From positions 124,001-188,000 of the IMG/VR virus record IMGVR_UViG_3300025121_000282: 64,000 nt of DNA, one strand, 5' to 3'. The translations under genes and the position numbers were made by a program. The notes under the pieces are model-generated. The model ran no database searches and had not been told where the DNA came from. It saw nothing but the letters and a program-made list of their open reading frames with translations. Each line of letters starts with the position of its first letter. The first letter of the stretch is position 1. Of the stretch, positions 9,576 to 63,439 are shown in pieces.

Positions 9576-9966
9576 GAGTTACAATAACCAATTTAGGTCA
9601 GGTTTTCCAATTCATAAGCTCAAGAATACTTGAGTTGGAAACACTTATAAGAGAGAACACCAGAGAAAGGGATATATGGCTGATCCACACACGTGAGGTG
9701 GGATTAAAGCCTGATAGCTCTACACCCGGAGTAGTCTCGTTGGTTTCTCCGTCCATGTTCTTTTACGTTGAGAACCGGATTGTAGCTACGCTCAATAAGT
9801 CTGAAGAAGCTCGGCGGGAAATAGATTTGTTAAGGGCATACAGGGCAAGTCTGTCTCCTTGTTATAACTGCGGTGGAAAAGGTGATATTTTATTTTATTT
9901 TATTTCGCACAGGCCGACGCTCATTTTGAGAAATGCCCTAAGTGTAATGGTTCAGGTCGTCCATGA
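9557..9966 (+). pseudogene. coiled-coil protein with a DnaJ-type CxxCxGxG zinc finger, frameshifted in (TATTT)4
   Basis: CYNCGGKG in one frame and CPKCNGSG in another; the repeat at 9886-9905 lies between them. Confidence 0.6.
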
Positions 9967-11532: not shown

Positions 11533-12126
11533 ATGATCAAGGTATACTCAATCCCTAAGACAGGAGTGTGGGCCGCCGTATCCGGAGGTGTGGACTCTAT
11601 GGCTATGCTTTCTTTTCTTACGACCGGCAAGAAAAGAATCGAGGGCGTAGTCAACATCGGGCATGGTACGGAATACGGTAAGCGAGCCACCGAATTGGTG
11701 GAGAAGTACTGTGCAGAAAAAGAAGTCCCATTCCACTTTGCCCAGGTTACGGGCTCTAACGAGATGGAATGGAGGGATGCCCGCAGGGAAATTTATTCCA
11801 AGTACTCGTGGGTGGCTACTGCGCACCACTTGGACGATGTGATTGAATGGTGGTTGATGACCTCGCTTCGAGGGTCTCCCAAGCTGACTCCCGTAAGGTC
11901 TGGGAACGTGGTCCACCCATTTCTCAGAACTCCGAAGTCTGAACTTGCCCATTGGTGTGAACGGCACCATGTGCCCTACCTGGACGATCCCACCAATGTT
12001 GGTAATTTTAACGAACGGGCCAAAATCCGGGTTCTAATGCCCAGCTTGCTGAACATTTATCCAGGAATTCACACTTCTATCGGCAATTTGCTTGAACTTA
12101 GGGGAGATGCACCACCCAATGAGTAA
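11533..12126 (+). CDS. tilS: tRNA(Ile)-lysidine synthetase-like PP-loop ATPase (catalytic domain only)
   Basis: AVSGGVDSM PP-loop, TAHHLDD, HPFL..PK.E, DPTN....R..IR. Confidence 0.8.
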   Translation: MIKVYSIPKTGVWAAVSGGVDSMAMLSFLTTGKKRIEGVVNIGHGTEYGKRATELVEKYCAEKEVPFHFAQVTGSNEMEWRDARREIYSKYSWVATAHHLDDVIEWWLMTSLRGSPKLTPVRSGNVVHPFLRTPKSELAHWCERHHVPYLDDPTNVGNFNERAKIRVLMPSLLNIYPGIHTSIGNLLELRGDAPPNE

Positions 12127-14751: not shown

Positions 14752-15117
14752 ATGAAAACATTGCACGTTTGTGTGAATGGTCAAGACTCGGTGGTTGTGC
14801 TAGACCTGTCTAGCGAGATTAAGTCCAGTTGTCAGCTTCGTGTCAACCTAGCTAACACAGTTGGACGGACTGATGGCGGGTTATTGCATGTAAGTTTCCA
14901 GTCCCGTGTGAAAGTGTATCAATACCTACTGACAGGGACAGAAACTTCTTTGTTTGATACCTGTGACACTGCAATTGTAGAGAACTGGGACCAGGAATCA
15001 GCACTCGCGGTTCGTGTCATCTATTGCGAGTTTCATGTGATGTCTAACGGACGCGTTAGGTTTTATAGTGACAAATACCAAACCAATTGGTTTCCCTCTG
15101 CTTTAATCCTGGGCTAA
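14752..15117 (+). CDS. hypothetical protein
   Basis: GGAG SD. Confidence 0.6.
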   Translation: MKTLHVCVNGQDSVVVLDLSSEIKSSCQLRVNLANTVGRTDGGLLHVSFQSRVKVYQYLLTGTETSLFDTCDTAIVENWDQESALAVRVIYCEFHVMSNGRVRFYSDKYQTNWFPSALILG

Positions 15118-15211
15118 AATCGCAGTAGTAACTGCGAGCGGGAACCCGCGAGAACACATTTCAAAACGTTGTGTTGTATTTACCGGACAACATGACAGCA
15201 AGGATAACAAA

Positions 15212-15409
15212 ATGAGACCAGACAATCAATCTTTAGATAAGCCGCTGAGCAAAATTCTTGAAGGCACTAAAGAGTTTTCGAGCGCGGTTACTGAACGGAT
15301 TCGTAGTCCCGATTGGGGTGACGCACACAAGCGTGAAATCTCCCACATTAGGACTAAACTTCTAGAGTTGGAAGCAGAACTGTCCAACCTTCAGATAAAC
15401 AACTGGTAA
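15212..15409 (+). CDS. small helical protein
   Basis: AAGGA SD. Confidence 0.6.
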   Translation: MRPDNQSLDKPLSKILEGTKEFSSAVTERIRSPDWGDAHKREISHIRTKLLELEAELSNLQINNW

Positions 15410-15877
15410 GTTGCAATCTGTAATTATTAATCTGTGGTGTTGTTCTCAGGACCCCACAGCAGAACCTTGTAAGCACACCCACTTCTGTCCGCTATGCTTT
15501 ATTGACGAAATCTGTGACTGCACCTGCTCGGTCACAGATGACCTTGGACTTTCAAAACACGGTCTACCTCGTGGGCACCACACTTTATGTGTGAATTGCT
15601 TAAATAGTATTACTTAGTACCCTACCTTATCTAGTACACCTACTACCAATCATTATCTCTTCAAACATAGTACTTGTGCACAGACAGCGTGTACTTATTA
15701 TTATGTTATGTCGCCCAGCACCAACCAGAACCACTTTCTAGAACCCACAAGAAGGCACACAATAGACCATTGACGGTGTATTAATGACACTGAAGAACCC
15801 CAGAAGAGAGAGTCGGTCAGGCAATCAGGCAGGATCGGCTCGGGGTTTTCAACTGGTTTTTAAGTGGAGATTGAAAA

Positions 15878-16483
15878 ATGCGTCTCGTTGCCCTTCAGAC
15901 TCAGGTTTTTCTTGCTGGTTGCGCTGTCCTCGTTCAGTCGGAGAGTGGTCGGCTCCAGTTTCGCCCCGCGTCGAAGGACGCCAAGGCGGCGCTGGCCCTG
16001 GTGACCATCGACCGGACGGACCCGGCGAATCCGGTGGAGACGGAGACGGTCCTTTTCGAGGGTCGCTACTCGTCCCAGACTTTCGACGCGGTCCGGTCTC
16101 AGGTCGAGATGGCGCTGGGTTGCCAGCTTCCCGACCTTCCTAACCGTCAGCAGACGGTGGAAGTTCAGGCTGATGCCCCGGCCAAGACCCCGAAGTCGAA
16201 GCTCCCTCCGAATGCGTGTCTTTGTGGGTGCGGGGCTACCACTTCGTCTCACAAGTCCCGGTTCGTTCAGGGCCATGACCAGCGGCTGGTTTCCATGATC
16301 CTCAAGGGGGACACGGCGAATCTCTCCCCGGAGCAGCTGACTGTCGGTCAGGCGATCATCGCCAGCAAGGCTGCGGCCCGTGCGGCAAAGGCTGCGACGA
16401 AGCCGGTCCTGCAGGCTGCGGACACGTCGGCCCCCACGTCTGCTTCCGCTCCCGCGGACACTGCTTCGGTGGCTTCTAACTGA
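15878..16483 (+). CDS. protein with a CxCGCG...F..GHD zinc-binding motif and Ala/Lys/Ser-rich tail
   Basis: CLCGCGATTSSHKSRFVQGHDQRL; GGAG SD; own promoter motif at 15770. Confidence 0.75.
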   Translation: MRLVALQTQVFLAGCAVLVQSESGRLQFRPASKDAKAALALVTIDRTDPANPVETETVLFEGRYSSQTFDAVRSQVEMALGCQLPDLPNRQQTVEVQADAPAKTPKSKLPPNACLCGCGATTSSHKSRFVQGHDQRLVSMILKGDTANLSPEQLTVGQAIIASKAAARAAKAATKPVLQAADTSAPTSASAPADTASVASN

Positions 16484-16484
16484 T

Positions 16485-16697
16485 TTGGGTAATGTGGCGC
16501 TGACCGGTATGTCAGCAGCTGCCCTCATCTTGTGAAACACACCATGATTTGCATCCCGGCAAGGAAGGGAAAGAATTGGGTGGGCAGTCACCCACTTGAG
16601 TACTGGAGCCGCGTGGGACCAAACCTCCCATTTGGCAGTCAAGGTGCGCAACGAGGGTAGTAAAATTAATCAGGTAAGACTCCTGAACATTACCCAA
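16485..16697 (+). ncRNA. candidate structured RNA: tRNA-like cloverleaf with a 125-nt insert in the anticodon arm
   Basis: Terminal stem 16485-16495/16687-16697; D-like arm GCTGAC-CGGTAT-GTCAGC; stem GCTGCCCTC/GAGGGTAGT; T-like arm TCAGG-TAAGACT-CCTGA; G-U pairs imply the + strand. Confidence 0.6.
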
Positions 16698-16704
16698 TTT
16701 CTTT

Positions 16705-16740
16705 CAAGGCCTGTGCTGACTTCGGTTGGTGCGGGCCTTG
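16705..16740 (+). other. 16-bp hairpin capped by a C(UUCG)G tetraloop (3' stabiliser or atypical terminator)
   Basis: CAAGGCCTGTGCTGAC-TTCG-GTTGGTGCGGGCCTTG with several G-U pairs; no U-tract. Confidence 0.7.
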
Positions 16741-16744
16741 TCGT

Positions 16745-17233
16745 ATGTATAGTCGTTGCATGGATTACACAGACATACTAAAACAACAAGTAATAGAAGT
16801 GGCCTCTACAGTTTGCCCTAAACTGGATGACATTTCGTCAGACACATATACAGGTATCTGTTCTTATGACCTTAGGAAATTGCATGCCGTTCTTTCAGAT
16901 TTGACTGACTATCAGCAAAATGAATGGAATCTTCGTCCCATCCTAGAACTAACACATTGCAACATTTTTAAAATCTGGATTTCTGCTGCAGATTTTATCA
17001 TTGTGGGAAAACACTCACCTATTGAGTTAAATCCACTACCTAAAGCTGAAGAACCCTGGGCTTGGTTGACGTTGAACTCTGGTAGGACCATCTATTTCCA
17101 CATAAGTAGAAGAATCATGAGTGGTGCCTGCTACCTAGACCAAGAAAAGAGACTCCCCGAAAATCTAGACCTAAGTTTATTTCGTCTTTTGCCTTGGACT
17201 GAAAAATGTGAAAGACCAATTGCTTACATCTGA
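16745..17233 (+). CDS. hypothetical protein
   Basis: 162-aa ORF. Confidence 0.55.
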   Translation: MYSRCMDYTDILKQQVIEVASTVCPKLDDISSDTYTGICSYDLRKLHAVLSDLTDYQQNEWNLRPILELTHCNIFKIWISAADFIIVGKHSPIELNPLPKAEEPWAWLTLNSGRTIYFHISRRIMSGACYLDQEKRLPENLDLSLFRLLPWTEKCERPIAYI

Positions 17234-17267
17234 CATTAACCGTCACATCTGATTATAGAATTATCCT

Positions 17268-17516
17268 ATGGCACAATCTAAGAAATTGACTAATCTTCAC
17301 GTGTTGATGGCGATTGATGTCCTTGGCATTGGCGCCTCGCCACCCACATTGGCGGAAACACTCGGTGTTAGTATTACCACTGTGTACAAATACCTGAACG
17401 AAATGTACTCATTGAGCCTAGCAGAAGCCATGCACATTGGGAATGGCCCAACTGTGTACTTTGTCTTGCCGTTGGGTCGTCGTCATTTGTACACCGAATA
17501 TCATGGTAATTACTGA
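17268..17516 (+). CDS. winged-HTH DNA-binding protein
   Basis: TLAETLGVSITTVYKYLNEM HTH with C-terminal wing. Confidence 0.7.
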   Translation: MAQSKKLTNLHVLMAIDVLGIGASPPTLAETLGVSITTVYKYLNEMYSLSLAEAMHIGNGPTVYFVLPLGRRHLYTEYHGNY

Positions 17517-17541
17517 ATTATAACAAGAAGGACTGATTGTA

Positions 17542-17772
17542 ATGACCGTGCAAGAACTCATTCATCATCTTGAACACTTTCATCCTGACCTGGAAGTGCG
17601 GATTGGGACCCGACCGGTGGGTTACCCCGCGCAGGCCTCTGTGGCTGGGGTAACCCAGATTGTAAATGAGAACCCGTCTGAGGACGAAGACGTGCTAGAA
17701 CCTGGGGTTGTGCTTGTCCTTCAGGGTGAACACCGGGGCTATCTCACCCGTAGTGCCTGGGGTGGGGTTTGA
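17542..17772 (+). CDS. conserved phage hypothetical protein
   Basis: MTVQELIHHLEHFHPDLEV start. Confidence 0.7.
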   Translation: MTVQELIHHLEHFHPDLEVRIGTRPVGYPAQASVAGVTQIVNENPSEDEDVLEPGVVLVLQGEHRGYLTRSAWGGV

Positions 17773-17790
17773 CAATGGCTGATCAATGCT

Positions 17791-18024
17791 TTGGCAATTG
17801 GAAGATTTTTGCATGACGATGGTACGTTCCACCTCAAGGTCATTGGCTTTCCCGGGCATGAGTCCATGTGGGTCTTGGTGAACTTAGAAGAGGGGAACGA
17901 CTTTGAGGGTTGGGGTACATTGGACAATGACCCCATCATGTCCAATTTGAAATGTGGAGACCGAATCCAGTACGGTAATGGTTCTGCCACCGACAAGCCG
18001 CAGTACATAACCCACACAACCTGA
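17791..18024 (+). CDS. DUF2314-like small beta protein
   Basis: E.MWV......G.LDNDP...L..GD.I. Confidence 0.5.
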   Translation: MAIGRFLHDDGTFHLKVIGFPGHESMWVLVNLEEGNDFEGWGTLDNDPIMSNLKCGDRIQYGNGSATDKPQYITHTT

Positions 18025-23306: not shown

Positions 23307-24137
23307 ATGTCTGCAGGAGCCCATTTCCTTGCAATGGACCTTAAGCAGTTGCTTGCAACTCTTACCATCAAGGTGGGTAAGAAAATTCATGGTCACACAT
23401 CTCGGGACCACATTCTTTTGGAATGCGGTTATTCTCATGTGCGAATTGATCGTAGTGGCAGTATTCAAGCTAGGAAGGAAGGGGAAGGGGAAAGGAATAA
23501 CCTTGACCGGGTCTGTCCAGATGTGGATTTTGAAACTGCTTACGTCTGGATGGTAAGTATTCTCATTGCTGGTCGTACGGTAGAGGTTGGCCAGGGTGTT
23601 GATTACAAGTCTATTTGCGGGTGGTGGCCCAGAAGCCATGTCAACATGTCACCCAAAGAACTGGTAAGGCAAGTTGTAGACCGTGGGTGGGACCTAAATC
23701 CTGATTATCAACGAGGGCATGTGTGGACCCCAAGCCACTCTGAAAGATTCATGGGTCATTTTCTTGAGGGCAATATGGTTCCGCCCTTTTATGTGCAGCG
23801 GTGGGACTCAGAAAAGAACGCACCCCCACACCTTAAGGCTGATTACTGGGACCACGCCGAAGTGGTGGATGGCCAGCAGCGCATTCGGGCCATCACAGCT
23901 TGGCTCGATGGGAGTATCCTGGCTGAACTGAGCGACGGGCGTCGGATTGCGTACAGGGACTTTGACGAGGTGGAACGGCGATGCCTTCCTGTGTTTAGCA
24001 TTTACTTCTTTGACATTTCTCGTGCAGAGCGTCTCAAGTTCTATCTTAAACTAAACAGAGCAGGTGTTTACCACACAGACGCCGAAATCGACAAAGTCAG
24101 AAAGTTGTTGGAAAATGAAACAACAACGCGGGAATAG
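23307..24137 (+). CDS. DUF262 (GmrS/ParB-like) domain protein
   Basis: LNPDYQRGHVW, VVDGQQRI, F..LN..G motifs. Confidence 0.8.
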   Translation: MSAGAHFLAMDLKQLLATLTIKVGKKIHGHTSRDHILLECGYSHVRIDRSGSIQARKEGEGERNNLDRVCPDVDFETAYVWMVSILIAGRTVEVGQGVDYKSICGWWPRSHVNMSPKELVRQVVDRGWDLNPDYQRGHVWTPSHSERFMGHFLEGNMVPPFYVQRWDSEKNAPPHLKADYWDHAEVVDGQQRIRAITAWLDGSILAELSDGRRIAYRDFDEVERRCLPVFSIYFFDISRAERLKFYLKLNRAGVYHTDAEIDKVRKLLENETTTRE

Positions 24138-26088: not shown

Positions 26089-26160
26089 GTTCTCCCTGAA
26101 ATAATCACTTATTTCAGTTGATTTTTAAGCCTGGGGGACTCTAAGCTCCCCAGGAGCCGT
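26089..26160 (-). ncRNA. 3' part of the putative omega/reRNA scaffold (5' boundary unknown)
   Basis: Hairpins at 26130-26154 and 26096-26117 (CTGAAATAA/TTATTTCAG) overlapping the tnpB 3' end and finishing in GAAC. Confidence 0.5.
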
Positions 26161-27200
26161 AAGGTTCTGGATCTGATGTTTGTGGCGCCGACGAAGTCGG
26201 CGTCTTGACCGTATCCGCAGGATACGCATCTAAATCTTTCGCCTTTACGGTTCTTTTCCGACTCCTTTAAACACTTTGGACAAATACGGGAAGTATAAGC
26301 AGCTAAAACAGGCACCACTAAAACACGGTTTTCTTGGGCCTTATGTTTTAAGCGCTCATGGACTCTGCGGACCGTCCAAGGAGCCATAGCTTTTCGGAAA
26401 CCTTTATTTCTTTTAGGGTTCTTCCCTTTCTTAATCCCTTTGAGGTCCTCTATTCCGAGAACTGAAATTTGATTCCATGGAATTTTGTTTAAAATTCTCC
26501 CAATATAATTTTCCCGTTCTTTCTGGGCTCTACGGAAACCATTAGAATCAGGAACACGTCTTCTGAGTTTATCTCTTATTTGACGGAATTCGGTACCTAA
26601 ATAAGTGGGCTTAGAACCATCAGACAAAGTAAGAAGTTTGATCACTCCTGAGTCAGCACCCACAGTGGTTTCAGGGTTTGGAACCTTGAGGTCTTGATCA
26701 GGTAAGTCAACCCACACAGCCAAAGAATTTTCAGAAATCTGAATTCCCTTCCCCATTTTAGCACCAGGGACAGCCAACCATTTATTAAGAACCCTTGTTC
26801 TTCTGGTCGGGATTATAATTCGCTCGCCTTTGGCGAGCGACGATAGTTTGATTACTAAATCGAATGACTTTTCACCATTTTCAATGCCCACAACCTTTGC
26901 ATCAAAAACACAATCACCAGTGAAATGAGGTAGACTAAAGCTTTGTCCCGTCTCCGCGGCTGCTTTGCAGCCGCTTGACAAGATCGACAGAGCCTGTCTA
27001 AGTGCTATCGATTTATAGCGTTCTGTGAGTCTCGTGTTTGTTAAACGAGCTAAGGTTTCTTTGTCCAAGCCTCCCGGCTCGGACCACAAGGATTTCAAAT
27101 AAAAGTTTACACCAGCCCGATAAGCTTGAAGAAGATTGGAAATCTTCTGCTTCTTTGAAGCAGTGATAAAATCCAAGCTTACTATGGCTGCTCGTCTCAT
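26109..27200 (-). CDS. tnpB: TnpB / Cas12f-like RNA-guided endonuclease
   Basis: RuvC-I VGADSG, RuvC-II IEDL, zinc ribbon YTSRICPKC..CVSC, RuvC-III DADFVGATNI. Confidence 0.9.
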   Translation of the reverse strand: MRRAAIVSLDFITASKKQKISNLLQAYRAGVNFYLKSLWSEPGGLDKETLARLTNTRLTERYKSIALRQALSILSSGCKAAAETGQSFSLPHFTGDCVFDAKVVGIENGEKSFDLVIKLSSLAKGERIIIPTRRTRVLNKWLAVPGAKMGKGIQISENSLAVWVDLPDQDLKVPNPETTVGADSGVIKLLTLSDGSKPTYLGTEFRQIRDKLRRRVPDSNGFRRAQKERENYIGRILNKIPWNQISVLGIEDLKGIKKGKNPKRNKGFRKAMAPWTVRRVHERLKHKAQENRVLVVPVLAAYTSRICPKCLKESEKNRKGERFRCVSCGYGQDADFVGATNIRSRTLRLLGSLESPRLKNQLK

Positions 27201-40178: not shown

Positions 40179-41363
40179 ATGAAAATCAACCTTGCCATGG
40201 TCGAAGCGGCAGTTGCCGGGTGCACCTCATTCGTACGTCGGGAGTTTGTCACCCCCTACGGCAGAGAGTGGGTCTCGTACGATTATTCCTATGCTTACCC
40301 GGCTCTCTTCGAAGAGCACCCCGCACGCCTGGAGTGCCGCGGCATCGTGTTTGACAAGGACACGGGTCAGGTGGTCTGCCGTCCCTACCACAAGTTCTTC
40401 AATGCGGGCGAGATTCCGGGTACCGGGCTGGACAAGCTTGGTCTGGACCGCCCCCACTACATCTTGGAGAAGCTGGACGGGTCGATGATTCGTCCCATGT
40501 GGGTCCATGAAGGTGAAGTCCATTTTGGCACCCGTGCGGGTGTTACCGAAGTTTCGGAGCAGGCCACCGAGTATGCCCGTACCCGGCCTCAGTACCATCA
40601 ACTGTGCGAAGACTTGATGAACATCGGGCACACCCCCATTTTCGAGTGGTGCAGCCTCCAGAACCGGGTGGTGATCGCACACCCTGTCGACCGTCTGGTG
40701 CTGACTGGCATCCGGGACAATCTTACCGGTCTGTATCAGCCCTACACTACCATGCGAGCGATCGCCAACGACTATGGTGTGGAGTGTGTTCGGGCTTTCG
40801 ACCTGAATACCTCTGACCGAGAGGCTTTTGCGGCCTACGTCGCCGACCTTTTGGACATGGAAGGCTTTGTCATCCGATTCGAAGATGGCGAACACCCCGT
40901 GATGGTCAAGGTCAAGGCTGATGACTACGTTCGCCGTCATAAGACCCTGGGCATCCTTCGATCGGAACGAGCCATGTTCGAAACCCTGCTCGACGGTCTG
41001 CTCGACGACGCCAAATCTCGGCTGAATGAGAATGACCTTCCCGCTGTGAATACCTTCGAGGCAGAATTTTACGAGATTCTGAATTGCCGGTCTGCCCATG
41101 CCCTGGAGTTGTTGACCAAGGCCCGGGAGTCTGGGTGCACCCGCAAGGAGTTTGCAACTGAAATCGTCGGGAAGCGCGGGGACCGGGGTGTGCTGTTCAA
41201 CTTGTTCACTCGGGAATACCTCACCATGAAAGAGGTTGCCGATGAATTCATGGCTGTCCTCTCCAAAGAGGGCACCAAAAACGACCCCGACAAGATCCGG
41301 CGCATCCTGATGGCCGATGTGTCGTGGAACCCTGGCCGCAAGATTTCCACCGGAGATGAATAA
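40179..41363 (+). CDS. T4 Rnl1-like ATP-dependent RNA ligase
   Basis: ECRGIVF, RPYHKFFN, motif I EKLDGS, FEW, EGFVI, VKVK...Y...H. Confidence 0.9.
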   Translation: MKINLAMVEAAVAGCTSFVRREFVTPYGREWVSYDYSYAYPALFEEHPARLECRGIVFDKDTGQVVCRPYHKFFNAGEIPGTGLDKLGLDRPHYILEKLDGSMIRPMWVHEGEVHFGTRAGVTEVSEQATEYARTRPQYHQLCEDLMNIGHTPIFEWCSLQNRVVIAHPVDRLVLTGIRDNLTGLYQPYTTMRAIANDYGVECVRAFDLNTSDREAFAAYVADLLDMEGFVIRFEDGEHPVMVKVKADDYVRRHKTLGILRSERAMFETLLDGLLDDAKSRLNENDLPAVNTFEAEFYEILNCRSAHALELLTKARESGCTRKEFATEIVGKRGDRGVLFNLFTREYLTMKEVADEFMAVLSKEGTKNDPDKIRRILMADVSWNPGRKISTGDE

Positions 41364-49721: not shown

Positions 49722-50399
49722 ATGGACATTTATCTTGTGCGACATGGCGAGTCAATGGGCAATGTGAACCACAAGGTTCATGAAACCACAGCCGACCACG
49801 CCATCCCGCTTTCATCTGATGGTTTCATGCAGGCTGCAAAAGCGGGAAACTGGCTCAAAGACAATCTCCCCGACCGGAGTTCTCTTGGATTTTTCAGCCG
49901 GGGTCCTAAGAGAACCCACAGGCGGTTGTGGAGTTCCCCCTACCTTCGTACCCGTCAAACGGCAAAGGTCATTCACGAAGTGGTTGGGGAACCTCTGATC
50001 ACGGATTATAAGGAGCACGTCCTGCTTTGTGAACAGCAATTTGGGCTCTTTGACGGTGTGCCTGATGAGGAGTTGCCGGTCAAGTACCCAAACGAGCATG
50101 CCCACTACGCAAAGTGCGAAAAGTTTGAAGGTCGCTTTTTCGCCCGTCTTCCGCTCGGAGAAAGTAGGTTTGATGTAGCTCAGCGAGTACATCAGGCATT
50201 TGGCACTCTTCATAGGGACGCTCAGCGGAATAACATTCACGACCTTGTCATTGTGGCCCATGGGGTGACAATCCGCGCTTTTGTGATGATGTGGTTCAAC
50301 CTACCTTATGAATGGTTTGAAGCTGAACCCAACCCGAAAAATTGTTCAATCCGCCATATTACTGACGGTAAAGACAAGGGTTATGTCTTCACTCCGTAA
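49722..50399 (+). CDS. histidine phosphatase (phosphoglycerate mutase-like) family protein
   Basis: LVRHGES, SSPYLRTRQT, L.EQQFG, GES, VAHG. Confidence 0.9.
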   Translation: MDIYLVRHGESMGNVNHKVHETTADHAIPLSSDGFMQAAKAGNWLKDNLPDRSSLGFFSRGPKRTHRRLWSSPYLRTRQTAKVIHEVVGEPLITDYKEHVLLCEQQFGLFDGVPDEELPVKYPNEHAHYAKCEKFEGRFFARLPLGESRFDVAQRVHQAFGTLHRDAQRNNIHDLVIVAHGVTIRAFVMMWFNLPYEWFEAEPNPKNCSIRHITDGKDKGYVFTP

Positions 50400-50471
50400 T
50401 TGACGGTATGTTCTTCTGTGTGAATTATACTGTAGAGACAGTAATCAACCAATTATAGGAACTACCTAAAA

Positions 50472-50972
50472 ATGCAAAATGCTCGCGTACTCGTTTTCGT
50501 TGACGGGGCCAACATCATGGCCCAGGCGCAAGACTTTTCTCGTCGCCCCAACTTCCGTACGTTGATCGACAGTTGTGTGGGCCACAATTTCCTGGTAGAC
50601 GCCTACGTCTACCTTCCGCTTCCCCACACCAATGGGGAGGGCGTTCTCCGCTTTCACGACCACCTCCGCTCCATGGGGTTGCAGGTTGTCGCCAAACGGG
50701 CGAAGATGCTCCCTGACGGGACCACCAAGTGTGACATGGACATGGAACTCGGGATGGACGCCATGGAACTGTGCCAGGACATCAAGCCCGACATGATGGT
50801 CCTGGCCTCGGGTGACGGGGACTTTGCCCCGCTCATCCAGCGTATCCGTCGTCGTGGAATTGTGACGGCTGTGGCGTCATGCCATGGTAGCTTAGCCAAC
50901 GAGCTTCGGCTCGTCTCCCAGAATTTCGTTGACCTTACCAAGTGGCGTGAATCTCAGAAAGAAAACCAGTAA
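50472..50972 (+). CDS. NYN domain (LabA/DUF88, PIN-like) nuclease
   Basis: FVDGANI, K.D.D..L..D, LASGDGDFAP, S...L. Confidence 0.85.
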   Translation: MQNARVLVFVDGANIMAQAQDFSRRPNFRTLIDSCVGHNFLVDAYVYLPLPHTNGEGVLRFHDHLRSMGLQVVAKRAKMLPDGTTKCDMDMELGMDAMELCQDIKPDMMVLASGDGDFAPLIQRIRRRGIVTAVASCHGSLANELRLVSQNFVDLTKWRESQKENQ

Positions 50973-50998
50973 TTACAACCATAGGGGGCTATTTTAGT

Positions 50999-51259
50999 AT
51001 GAAAACTTTTACAATCTCGGTAACTGTAACCCTAAGCTTCGATGTCATTGCTCTCAACCAGGAAGAAGCGGTGGTAAAGGGGCAGAAGGAACTGAACCGT
51101 TTTGCCTCCAGAAATGATGAGGACCCTGTTTTAGCAGTATCGGAGCTTCTGTCACCCTATTTCAACACGCTGGACACCCCTGAGATCAACCTGTGGCACA
51201 TCACGGACGAGACGGATGGCCCTGGTGTGTCTGACGACAGTGACGTGGAGGGAAAATAA
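50999..51259 (+). CDS. hypothetical protein
   Basis: V.A.NQEEA motif. Confidence 0.6.
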   Translation: MKTFTISVTVTLSFDVIALNQEEAVVKGQKELNRFASRNDEDPVLAVSELLSPYFNTLDTPEINLWHITDETDGPGVSDDSDVEGK

Positions 51260-51261
51260 AA

Positions 51262-51888
51262 ATGAATCCGTTTGGACATCTTGCACTCGCACTCAGCAAG
51301 ACCAATGGTCCTGCCAAAGGTATTGACGAGGCTGTCGGAATCATGAATGCCGTCAACATCGGACTGATTCCTGATTGTGACGTCTTCCGCAAGGCACTCG
51401 CTGCGTGGGGGATCGCAATCAAGGGGAAGGGTGACAACATTAGCAAGATGATTGGATCAGAGCGGACCATGAAAGTGGACCTGCCCAACGGTTGGGAAGC
51501 CCGACCCCATGGTAGTGGTGGCCATAACGCTCTTTTCGACAACTCGGGGGCAACCCGACTCCGGTGGCACATTCACCCCTGGGACCCCATTGCAACCTGG
51601 GTTGAAAATCGCTATTCGATCCGCACCGAGGACCTGTCTGTCTCGAAGGTGGTTTACCGGATTCTCGATGGAGCGGTGGTCATCCATACTTTCCCGTTCG
51701 AATACCCGCACGCTCGAACCATTGCTGACCGGGAAGGTGGAAGGACCTATTACAACCAGCCTGAAGACCGTCAGCAGAGCCGTGCAAATTACATGGCGGG
51801 AGAGGCCGCCCAGGAAATGGCCTCAAAATGGCTCGATGAAAACCGCCCGGGGTGCCGTGATGCCTTGAAATCGTGGAGCATCGATTGA
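51262..51888 (+). CDS. hypothetical protein (208 aa)
   Basis: GGAGG SD. Confidence 0.7.
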   Translation: MNPFGHLALALSKTNGPAKGIDEAVGIMNAVNIGLIPDCDVFRKALAAWGIAIKGKGDNISKMIGSERTMKVDLPNGWEARPHGSGGHNALFDNSGATRLRWHIHPWDPIATWVENRYSIRTEDLSVSKVVYRILDGAVVIHTFPFEYPHARTIADREGGRTYYNQPEDRQQSRANYMAGEAAQEMASKWLDENRPGCRDALKSWSID

Positions 51889-51935
51889 CTTGACGTCTTG
51901 TAGGGTGAAGACTCGTAACAAGGAGTTATAACCCT

Positions 51936-52640
51936 ATGGTCATTTCCGTCGTTTCTGATGTCCACTGTGAGCACGACACCACAAATAAGCTCGCAGCCAT
52001 CCGAGAGATGCCCAAGAAAGAGTTTCTTGTACTGGCAGGCGACATTGGCACCCGGTCGAGCCTGGAGGCCGCTGTTGAGGCCTTCTGTGGCCGCGCAAAC
52101 CATGTCATCATGGTGGCTGGAAATCACGAAGCGTGGGGCCGCACCATTCAGGCTTCACTCGACCAGTGTAAAGAACTGGAATCAAAGTTCCCCAATTTCC
52201 ATTTCCTGAACAACAGTTCCGTCGTGATTGATGGCCAGCGATTCGTGGGCACTTCGTTGTGGTTCCCTGACCACCCTCTCAATTTTGCGTTTCATCATCT
52301 GGATAACGATTTCGCGCGCATTGACAATTTCGTATCTGACGTGTATGCTCACGCGACTGCAGCCAAACGTTATCTGGAAGGAGCCGTTGACACAGACGAT
52401 GTGGTCATCACCCACCATCTTCCGAGCCATGAGTCTGTACACCCCCGGTTCCGTGCGTCTGAGGGAAACAGGTTTTACGTCCACGATGTTTCCCGACTGG
52501 TAGAATACGCTCAGCCGAAGCTGTGGATTCATGGTCACACCCACGACCCCGTGGACTACATGATTGGTGATACCCGAGTAATTTGCAATCCGATGGGGTA
52601 TTATATCTGTCCGATCACAACTGTTGACGTGGAGCAGTAA
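51936..52640 (+). CDS. calcineurin-like metallophosphoesterase
   Basis: SDVH, LAGDI, GNHE, THH.P, HGHTH, NP.GY. Confidence 0.9.
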   Translation: MVISVVSDVHCEHDTTNKLAAIREMPKKEFLVLAGDIGTRSSLEAAVEAFCGRANHVIMVAGNHEAWGRTIQASLDQCKELESKFPNFHFLNNSSVVIDGQRFVGTSLWFPDHPLNFAFHHLDNDFARIDNFVSDVYAHATAAKRYLEGAVDTDDVVITHHLPSHESVHPRFRASEGNRFYVHDVSRLVEYAQPKLWIHGHTHDPVDYMIGDTRVICNPMGYYICPITTVDVEQ

Positions 52641-56221: not shown

Positions 56222-57745
56222 CTATTCCCACTCGATGGTGGCAGGTGGCTTGTGGGAAATGTCATAGACTACCCGACAGATGCCTGGAACCTCGTTGGTG
56301 ATTCTGGTCGAAATCTTGTCCAGGACGTCATAGCCCATCCTGGACCAGTTGGCGGTCATCCCGTCTAAAGAGTCGCAAATTCTGACGACAACAGTGTCAC
56401 CATAGGTCCGCTCGTCCCCCACTACTCCTACCGATTTTACTGGTGCATACACAGCAAAATACTGCCAAAATTTCTTACTGGCATTGGTGGAGTACTCAGC
56501 CTCAACTACTTCAGAAACTATGTGGTTTGCTTTACGTGCAGCTGAGACCCGCTGCGGCGTAACCTCCCCTACAATTCTTATGGCCAAACCCGGGCCGGGA
56601 AAAGGCTGTCTCCAGAGCATCTTGTCGGGGATGCCGAGTTCTTTCCCCAACTCTCGGACCTCGTCCTTGAACATGAACCTAAGCGGCTCACACACCTTTA
56701 AACCAAGTTCTTTGGGTAAACCCCCCACGTTGTGATGACTCTTGATCACACTGGATGGGCCCTTGGTTGACATACTTTCGATAACATCGGGGTATAAAGT
56801 CCCCTGGGCTAAGAAGTCAAACTTCTCCCTACCCACTGCTGTCATGAATGCATTAATAAACTCGCGCCCAATAATCTTGCGTTTGGTTTCGGGGTCGGTT
56901 ACCCCCCTCAATGCATATAGGAATTGTTCTGAGGCGTCGTAGCACTTCACCCCAATCCCGTACCCGTCAAACATGTTCATGGTGTCTTCTACTTCTTCTT
57001 GCCTGAGAAGACCAGTATCCACAAACACACAAGTCAACCTGTCACCTATGGCATCATGAAGGAGTTTGGCAACTACGGTTGAATCCACACCTCCGGAAAC
57101 ACCACAGAGCACCTTGCTTGTGGGGCCAAGCTGTTCCTGAAGCTCTATCTGGATATTTGATAGTATGGTGTACGAGTTTTTCCTTAACGGAATCCCAGCA
57201 ATTTTTAAAAAGTTGGATAGTATTTTCCCACCAATTGCTGTATGGGAGACTTCTGGGTGAAACTGGACACCATAAAAATGAGCGTCGTCATTTGAGATAG
57301 CAGCAAATAGACCAGATTCTGACAGAGCATCAACTCTGAAACCGTGCGGTACTTGGTCCACTGAAACACCGTGGGACACCCACACTTCGAATTCGCCTTC
57401 AATGCCCCCCAATAATTTTGATTTCTGGAGTGCCTTAATAGAGGCCCGCCCGTACTCACCGTCACCCGTGGTACAAACAGACCCGCCCAAAGCAGTGGTT
57501 AAAAGCTGCATACCATAACAGATTCCAAGTATAGGCGCACCAAAATTTAGAATGCACGGATCTAGCGTAGGTGCTCCAGAGTCGGTGACGACAGCAGGGC
57601 CACCACTCAAGATTATCGCACTTGGGAACAAATCGTCAGTTACTTTATCCCATGGTAAAATTTTGTTTGCAGCACCCATCTCCAGTAGTCTTCTGGAGAT
57701 AAGTTGGGTGTACTGGCTGCCGTAGTCTACTATCAAAATTTCCAT
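56222..57745 (-). CDS. guaA: GMP synthase (glutamine-hydrolysing)
   Basis: DYGSQYTQLI, GICYGMQ, QFHPEV, SGGVDS, QGTLYPDVIES, KSHHNVGGLP, PFPGPGL, KPPATIEWE. Confidence 0.97.
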   Translation of the reverse strand: MEILIVDYGSQYTQLISRRLLEMGAANKILPWDKVTDDLFPSAIILSGGPAVVTDSGAPTLDPCILNFGAPILGICYGMQLLTTALGGSVCTTGDGEYGRASIKALQKSKLLGGIEGEFEVWVSHGVSVDQVPHGFRVDALSESGLFAAISNDDAHFYGVQFHPEVSHTAIGGKILSNFLKIAGIPLRKNSYTILSNIQIELQEQLGPTSKVLCGVSGGVDSTVVAKLLHDAIGDRLTCVFVDTGLLRQEEVEDTMNMFDGYGIGVKCYDASEQFLYALRGVTDPETKRKIIGREFINAFMTAVGREKFDFLAQGTLYPDVIESMSTKGPSSVIKSHHNVGGLPKELGLKVCEPLRFMFKDEVRELGKELGIPDKMLWRQPFPGPGLAIRIVGEVTPQRVSAARKANHIVSEVVEAEYSTNASKKFWQYFAVYAPVKSVGVVGDERTYGDTVVVRICDSLDGMTANWSRMGYDVLDKISTRITNEVPGICRVVYDISHKPPATIEWE

Positions 57746-57752
57746 TTTGTAA

Positions 57753-58859
57753 TTAGCCCTTGTAATTTGTGGTGGGTGTAACAGAAAGCATGTCGTGGAC
57801 GTGAGATTCAGACCTACCAGCTTGGGTTACGGTTGTGAACCGCATCCCACCTCTTAGCCGATTGATAGTTTTAGCGCCCACGTATCCCATGCCCGATTTG
57901 AGCCCACCAACTAACTGAAATAATACTTGAGAAACAGGACCCGTGTATGGGACCAACCCCTCTACACCTTCCGGGACCAGTTTGTCTTGGGCTACCCCGT
58001 CTTGAGAGTACCGGTCGCTGCTACCACTTTCCATAGCACCCACGGAACCCATACCTCTGTATTTCTTATAGTATTTTCCGTCATTAATACCTATTACTCT
58101 CTCTCCAGGGGCCTCGTCGCATCCAGCCAAAATGTTGCCAATCATGACAGCATGAGCACCTGCTGCTATGGCTTTGGTTATGTCTCCGGAGTACCGGATT
58201 CCACCATCAGCTATAATTGACAACCCATCTTCGGAGTCACAGACCGTGGCACAGTCAGAAATAGCCTGAAGTTGTGGAACCCCCGCACCAGAAACCACCC
58301 GGGTGGTACAGATGGAACCGCCACCTATGCCCACTTTCACTACATTTGCGCCAGCTTTATAGAGTCTGTAGGTGCCGTTTGCGTCTGTCACGTTACCGGC
58401 TATAATGGTAATGTCGGCGTCCAGTCCCCTCACATACTCCACCATTGAAACCACATTTTTGCTATTTCCGTGGGCGGAATCTATGACTATGGCGTCGGTT
58501 CTGGCCTCTACGAGTGCCCTGGCTCTAAATCTATTTGGCAAAGAGACACCGATAGCAGCTGCAGTTCTAGTGCCCCATTCTTCTCTGCTTTCTTTGATAG
58601 TGGTACACTGCTTTTCTATGGACATGTTTTTATGTAGTACACCCAAACCGCCACATTTCCACATTTCTCTCAGCATAGCTTCGTCCGTAACAGTGTCCAT
58701 AGCTGAACTTAAAATAGGTATAGACAGTCTTATGCTTCCGATGGTTGTGCCAGTGTCCGCTTCGTTTGGTGTGAATTCGGCATATGCAGGACACAAAAGA
58801 ACGTCATCGTAGGTGAGCCCGTGTGTGCGCTCTAACTCAAATCGGGTAAAATTCTTCAT
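57753..58859 (-). CDS. guaB: IMP dehydrogenase lacking the CBS/Bateman domain
   Basis: LTYDDVLL.P, SSAMDTVT, DSAHG, GIGGGSICTTR, IADGGI, YRGMGS, DRY flap, PEGVEG; only 368 aa. Confidence 0.93.
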   Translation of the reverse strand: MKNFTRFELERTHGLTYDDVLLCPAYAEFTPNEADTGTTIGSIRLSIPILSSAMDTVTDEAMLREMWKCGGLGVLHKNMSIEKQCTTIKESREEWGTRTAAAIGVSLPNRFRARALVEARTDAIVIDSAHGNSKNVVSMVEYVRGLDADITIIAGNVTDANGTYRLYKAGANVVKVGIGGGSICTTRVVSGAGVPQLQAISDCATVCDSEDGLSIIADGGIRYSGDITKAIAAGAHAVMIGNILAGCDEAPGERVIGINDGKYYKKYRGMGSVGAMESGSSDRYSQDGVAQDKLVPEGVEGLVPYTGPVSQVLFQLVGGLKSGMGYVGAKTINRLRGGMRFTTVTQAGRSESHVHDMLSVTPTTNYKG

Positions 58860-59780: not shown

Positions 59781-60059
59781 GTGGACCCAACACTTGAGGT
59801 CGCACGCAAGCTTACGTTTCGGCGACTAAAACCCACCTGCCCCAAAGTGCGGGAGTGTGAGGATGTTCTGTTGGGTGCCATGGCCCAATTGGAAACAAGA
59901 GTAAACAACTCTCCCGACAGGGAAAATCTTATTAATGGGTTTGTTGCAATAAAAACTGCTGTGTACGATTTCTTCTTATTAAACGATGAAATAAGAAATA
60001 AACTCCGCAATGAGTGGGTAGAACACATAGCTGAGTTGATTGACAACCACAATCTATAA
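59781..60059 (+). CDS. hypothetical protein
   Basis: Tiled ORF. Confidence 0.55.
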   Translation: MDPTLEVARKLTFRRLKPTCPKVRECEDVLLGAMAQLETRVNNSPDRENLINGFVAIKTAVYDFFLLNDEIRNKLRNEWVEHIAELIDNHNL

Positions 60060-60071
60060 CTGAATAGTTAT

Positions 60072-60313
60072 ATGAACACTATCAACATTCTCCCAGATGC
60101 CGGCTTTTTCACCCACTCGCGTTTCAGGCTGCCGAAATCATCGGTAAGCCCGAGTACTTGATGCACCCCGCCTGCATTGCGGGCTACCGCGATTATATGA
60201 AGGGCGATTTTGAGGCCATGTTTCACCGACTTGCCATTGACATGGACAAGTGGGGTGAAACCGATGAGGGCCGCAAATTGAACAGTCTCATCTTTCAGTA
60301 TAACGAGGAGTAA
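60072..60313 (+). pseudogene. hypothetical gene apparently frameshifted at T5 60105-60109
   Basis: Adding one T gives a continuous ~80-aa ORF filling the gap. Confidence 0.5.
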
Positions 60314-60318
60314 ATAGA

Positions 60319-63158: not shown

Positions 63159-63435
63159 AACTAAGCCCACCTATGGGAACCCCGAGCGGGCTTTTGAAGT
63201 GCGTGTTCTCGAATTGCACATCGAGTCACTGGAAGACCAGATAGAAGTATCCAGAGCTGGACTGGACAGCCTCAAGAAAGCGGCCGTCGTCCAGATTCTG
63301 GGTTATAACCCAGGCACAATCCGCACTTTAGGATGGAGTTGTCCGGAGTCCCCAATCGGAGAGTGCGTAGTGCCGCTTCGAGGGAGTGACAGAGGGTGCT
63401 GCCTGTTTTGTGATCTGCCTGACGAAAGAAAATAA
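63151..63435 (+). CDS. conserved phage Cys-rich protein
   Basis: C..SPIG.C......C.FC..P.ERK. Confidence 0.65.
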   Translation: MNKTKPTYGNPERAFEVRVLELHIESLEDQIEVSRAGLDSLKKAAVVQILGYNPGTIRTLGWSCPESPIGECVVPLRGSDRGCCLFCDLPDERK

Positions 63436-63439
63436 TTTT

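What the first reader, a model, noticed from the sequence alone, without database searches (positions are those of the whole stretch)
16485..16740. tRNA-like cloverleaf RNA with CU-CAU at the anticodon position, interrupted by a 125-nt folded insert
Seen in sequence: the element starts right after the stop of 15878..16483. It has an 11-bp terminal stem (TTGGGTAATGT/ACATTACCCAA) and a D-like arm with GG in the loop (16499-16516). It also has an anticodon-like stem (CTGCC 16519-23/GGTAG 16656-60) and a 5-bp T-like arm with a 7-nt loop (TCAGG-TAAGACT-CCTGA) abutting the 3' acceptor strand, which contains CCA (16694-96). The 5' stem strand is followed by CT-CAT (16524-28). Deleting 16529-16653 yields an exact 7-nt loop CU-CAU-AG and an ~84-nt tRNA-like product. 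The 5' piece ends in U, the insert ends in G, and GTG (16532-34) can pair with CAT. The insert folds into several helices (TTGTG/CGCAA, CACC/GGTG, TTGC/GCAA, GGGTG/CACCC, GTGGGA/TCCCAT). Established: the Azoarcus tRNA-Ile(CAU) group I intron has this CAU^A site and a GUG guide, but it is ~200 nt with a P4-P6 domain and P7 consensus that I cannot find here. The T-loop and variable region are also non-canonical. Inference: this could be an undescribed minimal or protein-spliced tRNA intron, a tRNA decoy against anticodon nucleases, or a new tRNA-mimic ncRNA. TilS (acts on CAU tRNAs) and an Rnl1 ligase are in the same window.
Basis: partly seen in the sequence, partly recalled or inferred. Interest (0 to 1): 0.85.

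Follow-up and report, generated by a model that had tools for sequence, protein, structure and literature searches.

The report
Conserved folded RNA behind a phage gene
The stretch is a real, evolutionarily maintained folded RNA of about 213 bases in an uncultivated giant phage, and it matches no known RNA family. The idea that it is a transfer RNA interrupted by a new kind of intron does not hold up.

Summary
The + strand of 16485-16698 folds far better than shuffled sequence (z = -5.3) and better than any other intergenic gap in the window. It is followed by a 16-bp UUCG hairpin (16705-16740).

Only two diverged sister lineages of the same jumbo phage carry it. Between them the stems evolve as slowly as codon positions 1+2 of the neighbouring gene (about 10% against 32% at position 3). 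Two pairs changed on both sides, five on one side with pairing kept, and one distal hairpin was replaced by a different hairpin. Indels of 3, 11, 1 and 9 nt rule out coding.

The tRNA reading fails.
- ARAGORN and Rfam find nothing.
- The "CU-CAU" letters sit inside or beside a conserved 9-bp helix.
- The "anticodon" becomes ACG, CCG, CAG or CAU depending on the deletion boundary chosen.
- The sister lineage has lost half of the T-like arm, yet its closing stem pairs again through two changes on the 5' strand.
- There is no group I core.

My best reading is a lineage-specific structured RNA in the 3' part of a GC-rich, moron-like cassette. Its function is unknown.

The parts
15677..15704 (+). 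Sigma-70-like promoter candidate (TGCACA, 16-nt spacer, TATTAT) at the start of the block conserved between the two phage lineages. It is the inferred start of the ORF201-RNA transcript.
   Evidence: Consensus scan. The same letters are present in L003. The conserved block starts near 15650. Function is inferred, not shown.
15878..16483 (+). ORF201, a GC-rich (59-72%) gene for a 201-aa protein of unknown function with an invariant CxCGCG...F..GHD motif. Its stop codon ends 1 nt before the RNA.
   Evidence: GC profile. Differences from L003 are 20/18/64 by codon position, which indicates coding. PHROG 5395 is the only match. Family alignment. No Pfam, PDB or fold match.
16485..16697 (+). Structured RNA core: a multi-branch fold closed by terminal stem P1 (16485-16495 with 16687-16697).
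   Evidence: z = -5.3. 98% of pair cells are standard pairs across the three variants. Eight G.U pairs and a better energy favour the + strand (-86.5 against -79.6 kcal/mol).
16499..16516 (+). Invariant in all variants.
16518..16661 (+). Long arm. P3 is 16518-16526 with 16653-16661 (9 bp). P4 is 16530-16534 with 16647-16651. P5/P6 is 16540-16549 with 16637-16646. Three distal hairpins follow: P7 (16554-16557 with 16567-16570), P8 (16576-16584 with 16591-16599) and P9 (16608-16618 with 16626-16636).
   Evidence: P3 has three one-sided pair-preserving changes. P6 changed U-A to C-G and P7 changed C-G to U-A. P8 has two one-sided changes in L089 and is replaced by a different hairpin in L003.
16670..16686 (+). 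P10, the 'T-like' hairpin (5 bp, loop UAAGACU). Present only in the window lineage. Its 3' half is deleted in the sister lineage.
16705..16740 (+). 16-bp hairpin with a UUCG loop (-25.6 kcal/mol) and no U tract after it. The segment 16698-16744, which holds this hairpin, is the most conserved of the locus (94%). It is the inferred 3' boundary or processing/terminator element of the cassette.
   Evidence: The intrinsic-terminator scan did not list it.
16745..17233 (+). ORF162, the downstream gene of unknown function (70% aa identity between lineages). Its true start may be the ATG at 16760.

Best explanation
The element is a lineage-specific, selectively maintained structured RNA of about 213 nt, made from the + strand. 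It sits in the 3' untranslated part of a self-contained, GC-rich, moron-like cassette: a promoter-like site near 15677-15704, a 5' UTR, ORF201, this RNA, and a 16-bp UUCG hairpin.

It acts as a folded RNA. It is not a coding sequence, not a DNA signal, and neither a tRNA nor an intron.

The part conserved in both lineages is a closing stem, an invariant hairpin (P2) and a long arm (P3-P6) ending in three hairpins. The tRNA-like fourth arm is an accessory of one lineage only.

The most likely mode of action is inferred, not shown. The RNA is co-transcribed with ORF201. Together with the terminal hairpin it forms a compact 3' module. That module either protects or defines the 3' end of the ORF201 message, or is released as a stable small RNA that serves as a binding platform for a protein.
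For: Shown:
- Exceptional fold stability (z = -5.3 and -5.6; sister lineage z = -4.6). It is the most structured intergenic stretch in the window.
- The same architecture is predicted independently in the three variants. The RNAalifold consensus energy is -66.6 against a mean of -85.8 kcal/mol for the single sequences.
- 98% of pair cells are standard pairs. Two pairs changed on both sides, five on one side with pairing kept, and hairpin P8 was replaced wholesale. Only one substitution breaks a pair.
- The stem-bearing 5' and 3' parts differ by 10.5-11% between lineages. Within the same cassette ORF201 differs by 9.5% at codon positions 1+2 and 32% at position 3. The neighbouring ORF162 differs by 26%.
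- Indels of 3, 11, 1 and 9 nt exclude a coding frame.
- G.U pairs and energies favour the + strand.
- The block 15650-16744 is conserved above its flanks (about 83% against 68-75%) and has a deviant GC content.
- The promoter-like site is conserved in both lineages.

Inferred: co-transcription, and the 3' module or stable-RNA role.
Against: - Only three distinct sequences exist, from two real lineages. Covariation is therefore not statistically decisive: 45 of 500 column shuffles reach the observed score.
- The hairpin has no U tract, so termination there is not established.
- Distant homologues of ORF201 (L091, L092) are not followed by this RNA, so it is not an obligate partner of that protein family.
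- The higher conservation of the whole cassette could partly reflect a more recent exchange between the lineages.
- No feature of the sequence points to a specific molecular function.
Confidence: 0.45

Rival explanations
1. The element is a cis-regulatory leader for the downstream gene ORF162. The folded domain would sense a ligand, a protein or temperature, and the 16-bp hairpin just upstream of the ORF162 start would serve as the expression platform (riboswitch-like or attenuator-like control).
For: The order is folded domain, then strong hairpin, then a start codon 5 or 20 nt later. The hairpin and spacer are the most conserved piece of the locus at 94%. Several unpaired junction and loop letters are invariant.
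Against: There is no match to any riboswitch or leader family, even at E <= 10. There is no U tract for transcription attenuation. I found no conserved alternative pairing between the domain and the hairpin: the GUCAGC/GCUGAC complementarity weakens in L003 (read from the sequences). No promoter was detected between ORF201 and the element, which starts 1 nt after the stop codon. ORF162 has no known function that would suggest a ligand.
Confidence: 0.15
2. The element is a tRNA-derived mimic. It would descend from a tRNA gene and, at least in the window lineage, be recognised by tRNA-handling enzymes such as RNase P, the CCA-adding enzyme, the phage TilS-like enzyme, Rnl1 or host anticodon nucleases. 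It would act as a processing signal or a decoy without being decoded.
For: - The four-way junction has tRNA-like proportions. A 7-bp segment of P1 stacks directly on a 5-bp arm with a 7-nt loop whose letters fit U54, R57, A58 and G53-C61.
- The D-like loop has A..GG.A, and one base separates P2 from P3.
- ARAGORN calls the trimmed form at 92% of its threshold, against 3% of geometry-matched shuffles.
- A TilS-like gene (11533-12126) and an Rnl1 gene (40179-41363) are in the window, and the window has no tRNA.
- Related phages keep tRNA(CAU) next to their TilS-like gene.
Against: - The T-like arm is lost in the sister lineage while the rest stays conserved and the closing stem still pairs.
- U8 and the U55-C56 equivalents are absent.
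- The CCA is buried in the stem.
- A profile built from 24 tRNAs of related phages gives no hit at all.
- The Rfam tRNA model gives nothing.
- There is no similarity to the relatives' tRNA(CAU) genes.
Confidence: 0.12
3. This is the first reader's main model: a tRNA(CAU) gene interrupted after the anticodon by a new, minimal 125-nt intron (16529-16653) that is self-spliced or protein-spliced to give an 84-nt tRNA.
For: A U precedes the proposed 5' site, a G ends the insert, and GUG at 16532-16534 could pair with CAU. The trimmed sequence is called tRNA-Met(CAT) by ARAGORN at a lowered threshold. A true group I intron in a tRNA(CAU) exists next to the TilS-like gene of a related phage, L183.
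Against: - No group I signal appears even at E <= 10, although the same search finds the L183 intron at 54 bits.
- At 125 nt the insert is far below known self-splicing group I introns, and no P3/P7 core is evident. This rests on my own knowledge and on the fold.
- GUG is engaged in the conserved P4 helix.
- Three other boundaries give equally good 'tRNAs' with other anticodons.
- The mature form would have a 4-bp T stem, a G.A pair in the acceptor stem, an 8-nt variable loop and no U8.
- The sister lineage cannot form the tRNA at all.
Confidence: 0.03
4. The RNA fold has no function of its own. Conservation would reflect DNA-level signals (a terminator for ORF201, a promoter for ORF162) and a recent exchange of the cassette between the two lineages. 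The fold would be a by-product of GC-rich palindromic sequence.
For: Only two lineages carry it. The whole cassette is more conserved than its flanks. A promoter-like TTGGTG, 16-nt spacer, TATAGT lies in and after the hairpin (read). Covariation statistics are weak.
Against: Within the same cassette the stems change three times more slowly than third codon positions. Nearly all substitutions in helices preserve pairing, including G.U intermediates, which matter only in RNA. After the 9-nt deletion the closing stem still pairs, through two changes on the 5' strand. The stability z-score is far outside that of other intergenic regions.
Confidence: 0.12

Closest known systems
tRNA, and intron-containing tRNA(CAU) genes (the Azoarcus tRNA-Ile group I intron; the split tRNA(CAU) found here in related phage L183)
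   Same: Both have a four-way junction with a hairpin stacked directly on the terminal stem, a GG-containing loop in the first hairpin, and a long structured segment where the anticodon loop would be. The phage also carries a TilS-like gene.
   Different: tRNA finders and covariance models do not detect it. It lacks U8 and the U55-C56 equivalents, and its terminal stem has 11 bp with the CCA buried inside. The 'anticodon' letters are paired. The fourth arm is absent in the sister lineage. The insert has no group I core and is about 125 nt, against about 555 nt in L183.
tRNA-like domains of non-coding RNAs: the tmRNA tRNA-like domain and the bacterial or phage Y RNAs of the YrlA type (PMC4201824)
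   Same: In both, a tRNA-shaped module is embedded in a larger RNA and a long helix replaces the anticodon arm. Such RNAs are known in phages.
   Different: There is no tmRNA call and no conserved tag reading frame. No Ro60/TROVE gene was found, whereas YrlA lies within 4 kb of one on the same strand, and there is no Rfam match. In YrlA the RNA ends lie on the Ro-binding helix, whereas here they lie on the acceptor-like stem.
Phage morons (a promoter, gene and terminator unit with deviant base composition inserted between phage genes; my own knowledge of the concept)
   Same: A GC-rich gene (59-72% against 40-48% around it) lies between a promoter-like site and a strong hairpin. The unit is conserved as a block between lineages whose flanks are more diverged.
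   Different: Classical morons have a simple terminator directly after the gene. Here a 213-nt multi-branch RNA lies between the stop codon and the hairpin, and the hairpin lacks a U tract.
Large junction-type cis-regulatory RNAs (riboswitch aptamer followed by an expression-platform hairpin)
   Same: The size is similar. A closing stem encloses a multi-helix junction, followed by a stable hairpin just before the next gene.
   Different: It matches none of 4227 Rfam families. There is no U tract, no conserved alternative pairing, and no upstream promoter separate from ORF201.

Membership tests
tRNA | Recognised by tRNA gene finders or covariance models | tested here: not met
   ARAGORN found 0 genes in the window. 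It found none in the intact element with the intron options. The Rfam tRNA model gave nothing at gathering score or at E <= 10. A profile of 24 related-phage tRNAs gave no hit. Positive controls were found in L183, L185 and L186.
tRNA | A 7-nt anticodon loop on a 5-bp stem | tested here: not met
   In the native sequence the letters C, U and C are paired in a conserved 9-bp helix. A loop appears only after a hypothetical 125-nt deletion, and four boundaries give four different anticodons.
tRNA | A T arm with G53-C61 and a U54-U55-C56-R57-A58 loop, conserved among relatives | tested here: not met
   The loop UAAGACU fits positions 54, 57 and 58 and the closing pair, but has AA at 55-56. The 3' half of the arm is deleted in the sister lineage in four independent assemblies.
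tRNA | A 7-bp acceptor stem with a free discriminator and CCA, plus U8 | tested here: not met
   The terminal stem has 11 bp and the CCA (16694-16696) is paired within it. Positions 8-9 would be G and C. ARAGORN's sub-threshold drawing has a G.A pair in the acceptor stem.
Group I intron | Match to the conserved catalytic core (Rfam RF00028; P3-P9 with the P7 G-binding site) | tested here: not met
   There was no match at E <= 10 on 15500-17500. The same model scores 54.3 bits on the L183 intron. The predicted fold of the insert is a simple nested arm with three hairpins.
Group I intron | U before the 5' splice site pairing with a guide G, and a terminal G | tested here: inconclusive
   U16528, G16653 and GUG at 16532-16534 exist. 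These are very short features, and the GUG is used in the conserved P4 helix.
Group I intron | A ligated-exon junction present in RNA | not testable with these tools
tmRNA | A tRNA-like domain plus a tag-peptide reading frame | tested here: not met
   ARAGORN and Rfam gave no tmRNA. Indels of 11, 1 and 3 nt between lineages break any frame. A true phage tmRNA was found in L185 as a control.
Y RNA (YrlA type) | Encoded within about 4 kb of a Ro60/TROVE gene on the same strand, with canonical D/T-arm letters (PMC4201824) | tested here: not met
   The flanking ORFs have no TROVE domain. No TROVE match appeared among the 30 ORFs scanned against Pfam, which include every ORF of 250 aa or more. Rfam gave no match. 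The criteria were read.
Known riboswitch or leader classes | Match to a described aptamer family | tested here: not met
   There were no matches among 4227 Rfam families at E <= 10.
Intrinsic terminator (for 16705-16740) | A GC-rich stem followed by a U tract | tested here: not met
   The 16-bp stem is present (-25.6 kcal/mol), but the tail GUCGUAUGUAUAG has no U run and the scan does not list it.
Phage moron | A gene of deviant composition bracketed by its own promoter and terminator | tested here: inconclusive
   The deviant GC content is clear. The promoter is only a consensus match, though conserved in both lineages. Terminator function of the hairpin is unproven.

The most novel reading that the evidence does not exclude
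The window-lineage form could be a tRNA-derived, tRNA-shaped RNA that the phage uses together with its TilS-like and Rnl1 enzymes. It might serve as a substrate, as a decoy for host anticodon nucleases, or as an RNase P-type processing signal at the end of a message. In the extreme version, its 125-nt arm would be removed by an unknown splicing activity to give a CAU tRNA. The evidence does not exclude this for the window lineage. It makes it unlikely, because the sister lineage keeps the RNA without the fourth arm.
Probability: 0.08. Interest if true: 0.75.

Novelty: new variant of a known kind. Interest (0 to 1): 0.35.

Why it matters
If the RNA is functional, it adds an unclassified structured RNA of about 213 nt to the very small set known from jumbo phages. 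It also shows a moron-like cassette carrying an elaborate RNA domain between its gene and its end hairpin. That domain could be a phage device for message stability or for making a small RNA.

Its value is limited for three reasons. It occurs in only two lineages of one uncultivated phage. No function can be assigned. The more exciting reading, a new minimal tRNA intron, is not supported.

The side observation is a cleaner lead for tRNA biology in phages. A related phage carries a tRNA(CAU) split by a group I intron right next to its TilS-like gene.

Tried and rejected
- **RNA families.** Rfam over the whole window at gathering score, and over 15500-17500 at E <= 10, gave nothing.
- **tRNA finders.** ARAGORN at default settings, with intron options and at lowered thresholds, gave only a sub-threshold call on the hand-trimmed form.
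- **Annotated phages.** Near and distant DNA searches of INPHARED gave no match.
- **Protein-anchored searches.** ORF201 and ORF162 found only the same two lineages in 5.8 billion proteins. An exhaustive HMMER search found distant ORF201 homologues, but they lack the RNA.
- **DNA pattern scans.** I used loop and junction letters with free stems.
  - Metagenome contigs returned itself, one known relative and 5 chance hits.
  - Genome contigs returned 6 chance hits.
  - Four viral-contig patterns returned itself plus chance hits.
- **Profile and covariance searches.** An nhmmer profile over all 183 held sequences, and covariance model R1 over the window and related phage loci, found no paralogue and no distant homologue.
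- **Related phages via the TilS-like protein (L183, L185, L186).** These have different synteny, real tRNAs, a tmRNA and a group I intron, but no copy of this RNA and no sequence similarity to it.
- **Other models considered and rejected.**
  - Retron-type RNA: no reverse-transcriptase match among the 30 ORFs scanned, which include every ORF of 250 aa or more.
  - Type III antitoxin: the repeat scan of 15000-18000 reports no repeat unit within the RNA, and there is no ToxN match.
  - TnpB guide RNA: the TnpB-like gene is about 9.5 kb away.
  - Stop-codon readthrough or SECIS: a TAA follows two codons after the stop.
  - Archaeal-type bulge-helix-bulge intron: the bulges do not fit.
- **ORF201 function.** Pfam, PHROGs, PDB sequence search, the ESM Atlas and an AlphaFold model with Foldseek gave no assignment.

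Full report
**Source and setting**

The window is part of IMGVR_UViG_3300025121_000282, a 314,886-bp viral contig. It is densely packed with small + strand ORFs, most of which have no family match. The INPHARED phage collection holds nothing similar.

**Checking the observation**

- An exact 11-bp inverted repeat at 16485-16495 and 16687-16697.
- A 6-bp hairpin with loop CGGUAU at 16499-16516.
- A 5-bp hairpin with a 7-nt loop at 16670-16686, abutting the 3' strand of the terminal stem.
- The short letter strings CTCAT, GTG and CCA.

The + strand of 16485-16698 folds to -86.5 kcal/mol, with z = -5.3 against dinucleotide shuffles. Including the following hairpin gives -111.5 kcal/mol and z = -5.6. 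Sixteen other intergenic gaps in the window range from z = -3.5 to +2.5, so this is the outstanding folded stretch of the window.

The predicted architecture is as follows.
- P1: the closing stem.
- P2: a hairpin.
- A long arm, P3-P4-P5/P6, ending in three hairpins, P7, P8 and P9.
- P10: the T-like hairpin.
- A separate 16-bp UUCG hairpin at 16705-16740, with no U tract after it.

The C, U and C of 'CU-CAU' are paired, and the CCA lies inside P1.

**Relatives**

Protein-anchored look-ups recovered the same locus in two lineages only.
- A near-identical set: L008, L089, L090 and L096, with about 98% identity in ORF162.
- A diverged sister lineage assembled independently from five sequencing runs: L003-L007 and L088.

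Flanking genes of the sister lineage are 68-75% identical in DNA. The block 15650-16744 is about 83% identical.

The following further searches found no other copy and no paralogue:
- an exhaustive HMMER search for ORF201;
- loop-anchored DNA patterns in the metagenome, genome and viral collections;
- an nhmmer profile over all held sequences;
- covariance model R1.

Distant ORF201 homologues are not followed by the RNA.

**Evidence that it is a functional RNA**

ORF201 differs between the lineages at 20, 18 and 64 sites by codon position, the signature of a coding gene. The RNA's stem-bearing 5' and 3' parts differ by only 10.5% and 11%. This matches codon positions 1+2 (9.5%) and is three times less than position 3 (32%) in the same cassette. 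The distal hairpins are 37% diverged and carry indels. Indels of 3, 11, 1 and 9 nt exclude a reading frame.

Of the substitutions that fall in helices, nearly all preserve pairing.
- Two are double changes: U-A to C-G in P6 and C-G to U-A in P7.
- Three in P3 and two in P8 are one-sided changes through G.U pairs.
- An A.A mismatch becomes A-U.
- P8 is replaced by a different hairpin.
- One substitution breaks a pair.

Overall 98% of pair cells are standard pairs, against 35-50% for slid partners. The many G.U pairs and the energies favour the + strand: -86.5 against -79.6 kcal/mol, and -111.5 against -91.5 with the hairpin. With only three distinct sequences the shuffle control is not decisive (45 of 500), so the structure is well supported but not proven.

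**Why the tRNA-with-intron reading fails**

1. Detection fails. ARAGORN finds nothing in the intact element, even with intron options. Rfam gives no tRNA, tmRNA or group I match at E <= 10. The same tools found 23 tRNAs, a tmRNA and a group I intron in related phages, so sensitivity is not the problem.
2. The hand-trimmed form is called only at 92% or less of ARAGORN's threshold. The drawing is poor: a G.A pair in the acceptor stem, a 4-bp T stem and an 8-nt variable loop. At 90% of threshold the window itself gives two chance calls.
3. Among 300 shuffles that keep the helices but permute the letters, 9 reach the 92% level. The sequence-specific resemblance is therefore modest.
4. Four neighbouring deletion boundaries give equally scored 'tRNAs' reading ACG, CCG, CAG or CAU. 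CAU is an artefact of the chosen cut.
5. A profile of 24 tRNAs from related phages does not hit the trimmed form. There is no similarity to their tRNA(CAU) genes or to the L183 intron.
6. The sister lineage has a 9-nt deletion, seen in four independent assemblies, that removes the 3' half of P10 and four pairs of P1. Its 5' strand reads GG where the window reads AA, giving a closing stem UUGGGUG/CACCCAA. The former T-loop U is also changed. No boundary gives a tRNA call there, even at 80% of threshold. Selection common to both lineages therefore acts on the closing stem, P2 and the long arm, not on a cloverleaf.
7. The insert has no group I core, and its GUG is used in the conserved P4 helix.

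**Context and likely mode of action**

ORF201 is a 59-72% GC island in a 40-48% GC neighbourhood. It encodes a small protein whose only conserved feature is a CxCGCG...F..GHD motif. That region is confidently modelled but has no Pfam, PDB or fold match.

The conserved block begins at a promoter-like site, 15677-15704, which is present in both lineages. It ends with the UUCG hairpin, and the segment 16698-16744 that holds the hairpin is the most conserved of the locus at 94%.

This is the layout of a phage moron, with the folded RNA placed between the stop codon (1 nt before P1) and the end hairpin. I therefore read the RNA as a 3' domain of the ORF201 transcript that works through its fold. 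It may stabilise or define the 3' end, or be released as a stable small RNA or protein platform. These last steps are inference.

The main rival is a leader controlling ORF162. No known aptamer class, U tract or conserved alternative pairing supports that reading.

**Comparison with known systems**

The element resembles tRNA-shaped modules of non-coding RNAs (the tmRNA tRNA-like domain, and YrlA-type Y RNAs, PMC4201824) in shape only. The defining features of tRNA, group I introns, tmRNA and YrlA were tested and are not met. No Rfam family fits. I classify it as a new, lineage-restricted variant of phage structured non-coding RNA, of moderate to low interest until expression data or more relatives exist.

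Noticed in passing
L183:9310-9945 (ENA ERZ23491141, KOPF15-1 scaffold_11, 141 kb): This phage's TilS-like protein is 55% identical to the window's. Immediately upstream of that gene it has a tRNA(CAU) gene split in the anticodon loop by an insert of about 555 nt. The insert contains a group I intron core (Rfam RF00028, 54.3 bits, 9615-9863). ARAGORN missed this tRNA.
   Followed up: partly
window 11533-12126; L183, L185, L186: The window has a short TilS-like PP-loop gene (PF01171) but no tRNA in 64 kb. Three related phages have tRNA arrays beside their TilS-like gene: 10 tRNAs, 9 tRNAs plus a tmRNA, and 4 tRNAs. In L185 a tRNA(CAT) lies directly upstream of the gene.
   Followed up: partly
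window 26109-27200 (-): A TnpB-like protein (Cas12f1-like TNB domain plus a weak OrfB_IS605 match) is encoded in the phage. Its guide-RNA region downstream of the gene (below 26109) was read but not analysed.
   Followed up: no
window 40179-41363, 23307-24137, 56222-58859 (-), 49722-52640: The window also encodes an Rnl1-type RNA ligase, a protein with a GmrSD N-terminal domain, GMP synthase and IMP dehydrogenase, a histidine phosphatase and a metallophosphoesterase.
   Followed up: no
window 15878-16483 (ORF201): ORF201 belongs to a family of small, often phage-borne proteins whose only invariant feature is CxCGCG...F..GHD, sometimes repeated several times in one protein. AlphaFold models residues 105-170 with pLDDT of about 95, but no PDB fold or Pfam family matches. 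There is a faint, non-significant resemblance to the SecA C-terminal zinc motif.
   Followed up: partly
window 16726-16762: TTGGTG, 16 nt, then TATAGT lies in the 3' arm of the hairpin and just after it. This places a possible transcription start at the ATG of 16760 and would give a leaderless ORF162. Two of the four codons between the ATGs at 16745 and 16760 change the amino acid between lineages, which favours 16760 as the true start.
   Followed up: no
window 15715-15726 and 16724-16735: A stretch just downstream of the promoter-like site is complementary (9 contiguous pairs) to the 3' arm of the end hairpin. In the sister lineage 8 pairs remain, one of them a wobble pair. This may be chance.
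   Followed up: no
L003:2103-2110: The sister lineage lacks the T-like arm, yet it contains the canonical T-loop string GTTCGAAT flanked by CCCA/TGGG in the variable distal region. The window lineage has no such string there. This is probably coincidence.
   Followed up: no
window 60053-60318 and 63159-63439: These two other intergenic gaps have moderately low folding z-scores, -2.9 and -3.5 for the first and -3.3 on the minus strand for the second. Neither has an Rfam match.
   Followed up: no
window 15410-15650: The stretch just upstream of the conserved cassette includes a Cys-rich 68-aa ORF at 15411-15617. It does not align with the sister lineage, which has different sequence there. This marks the left edge of the cassette.
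   Followed up: no
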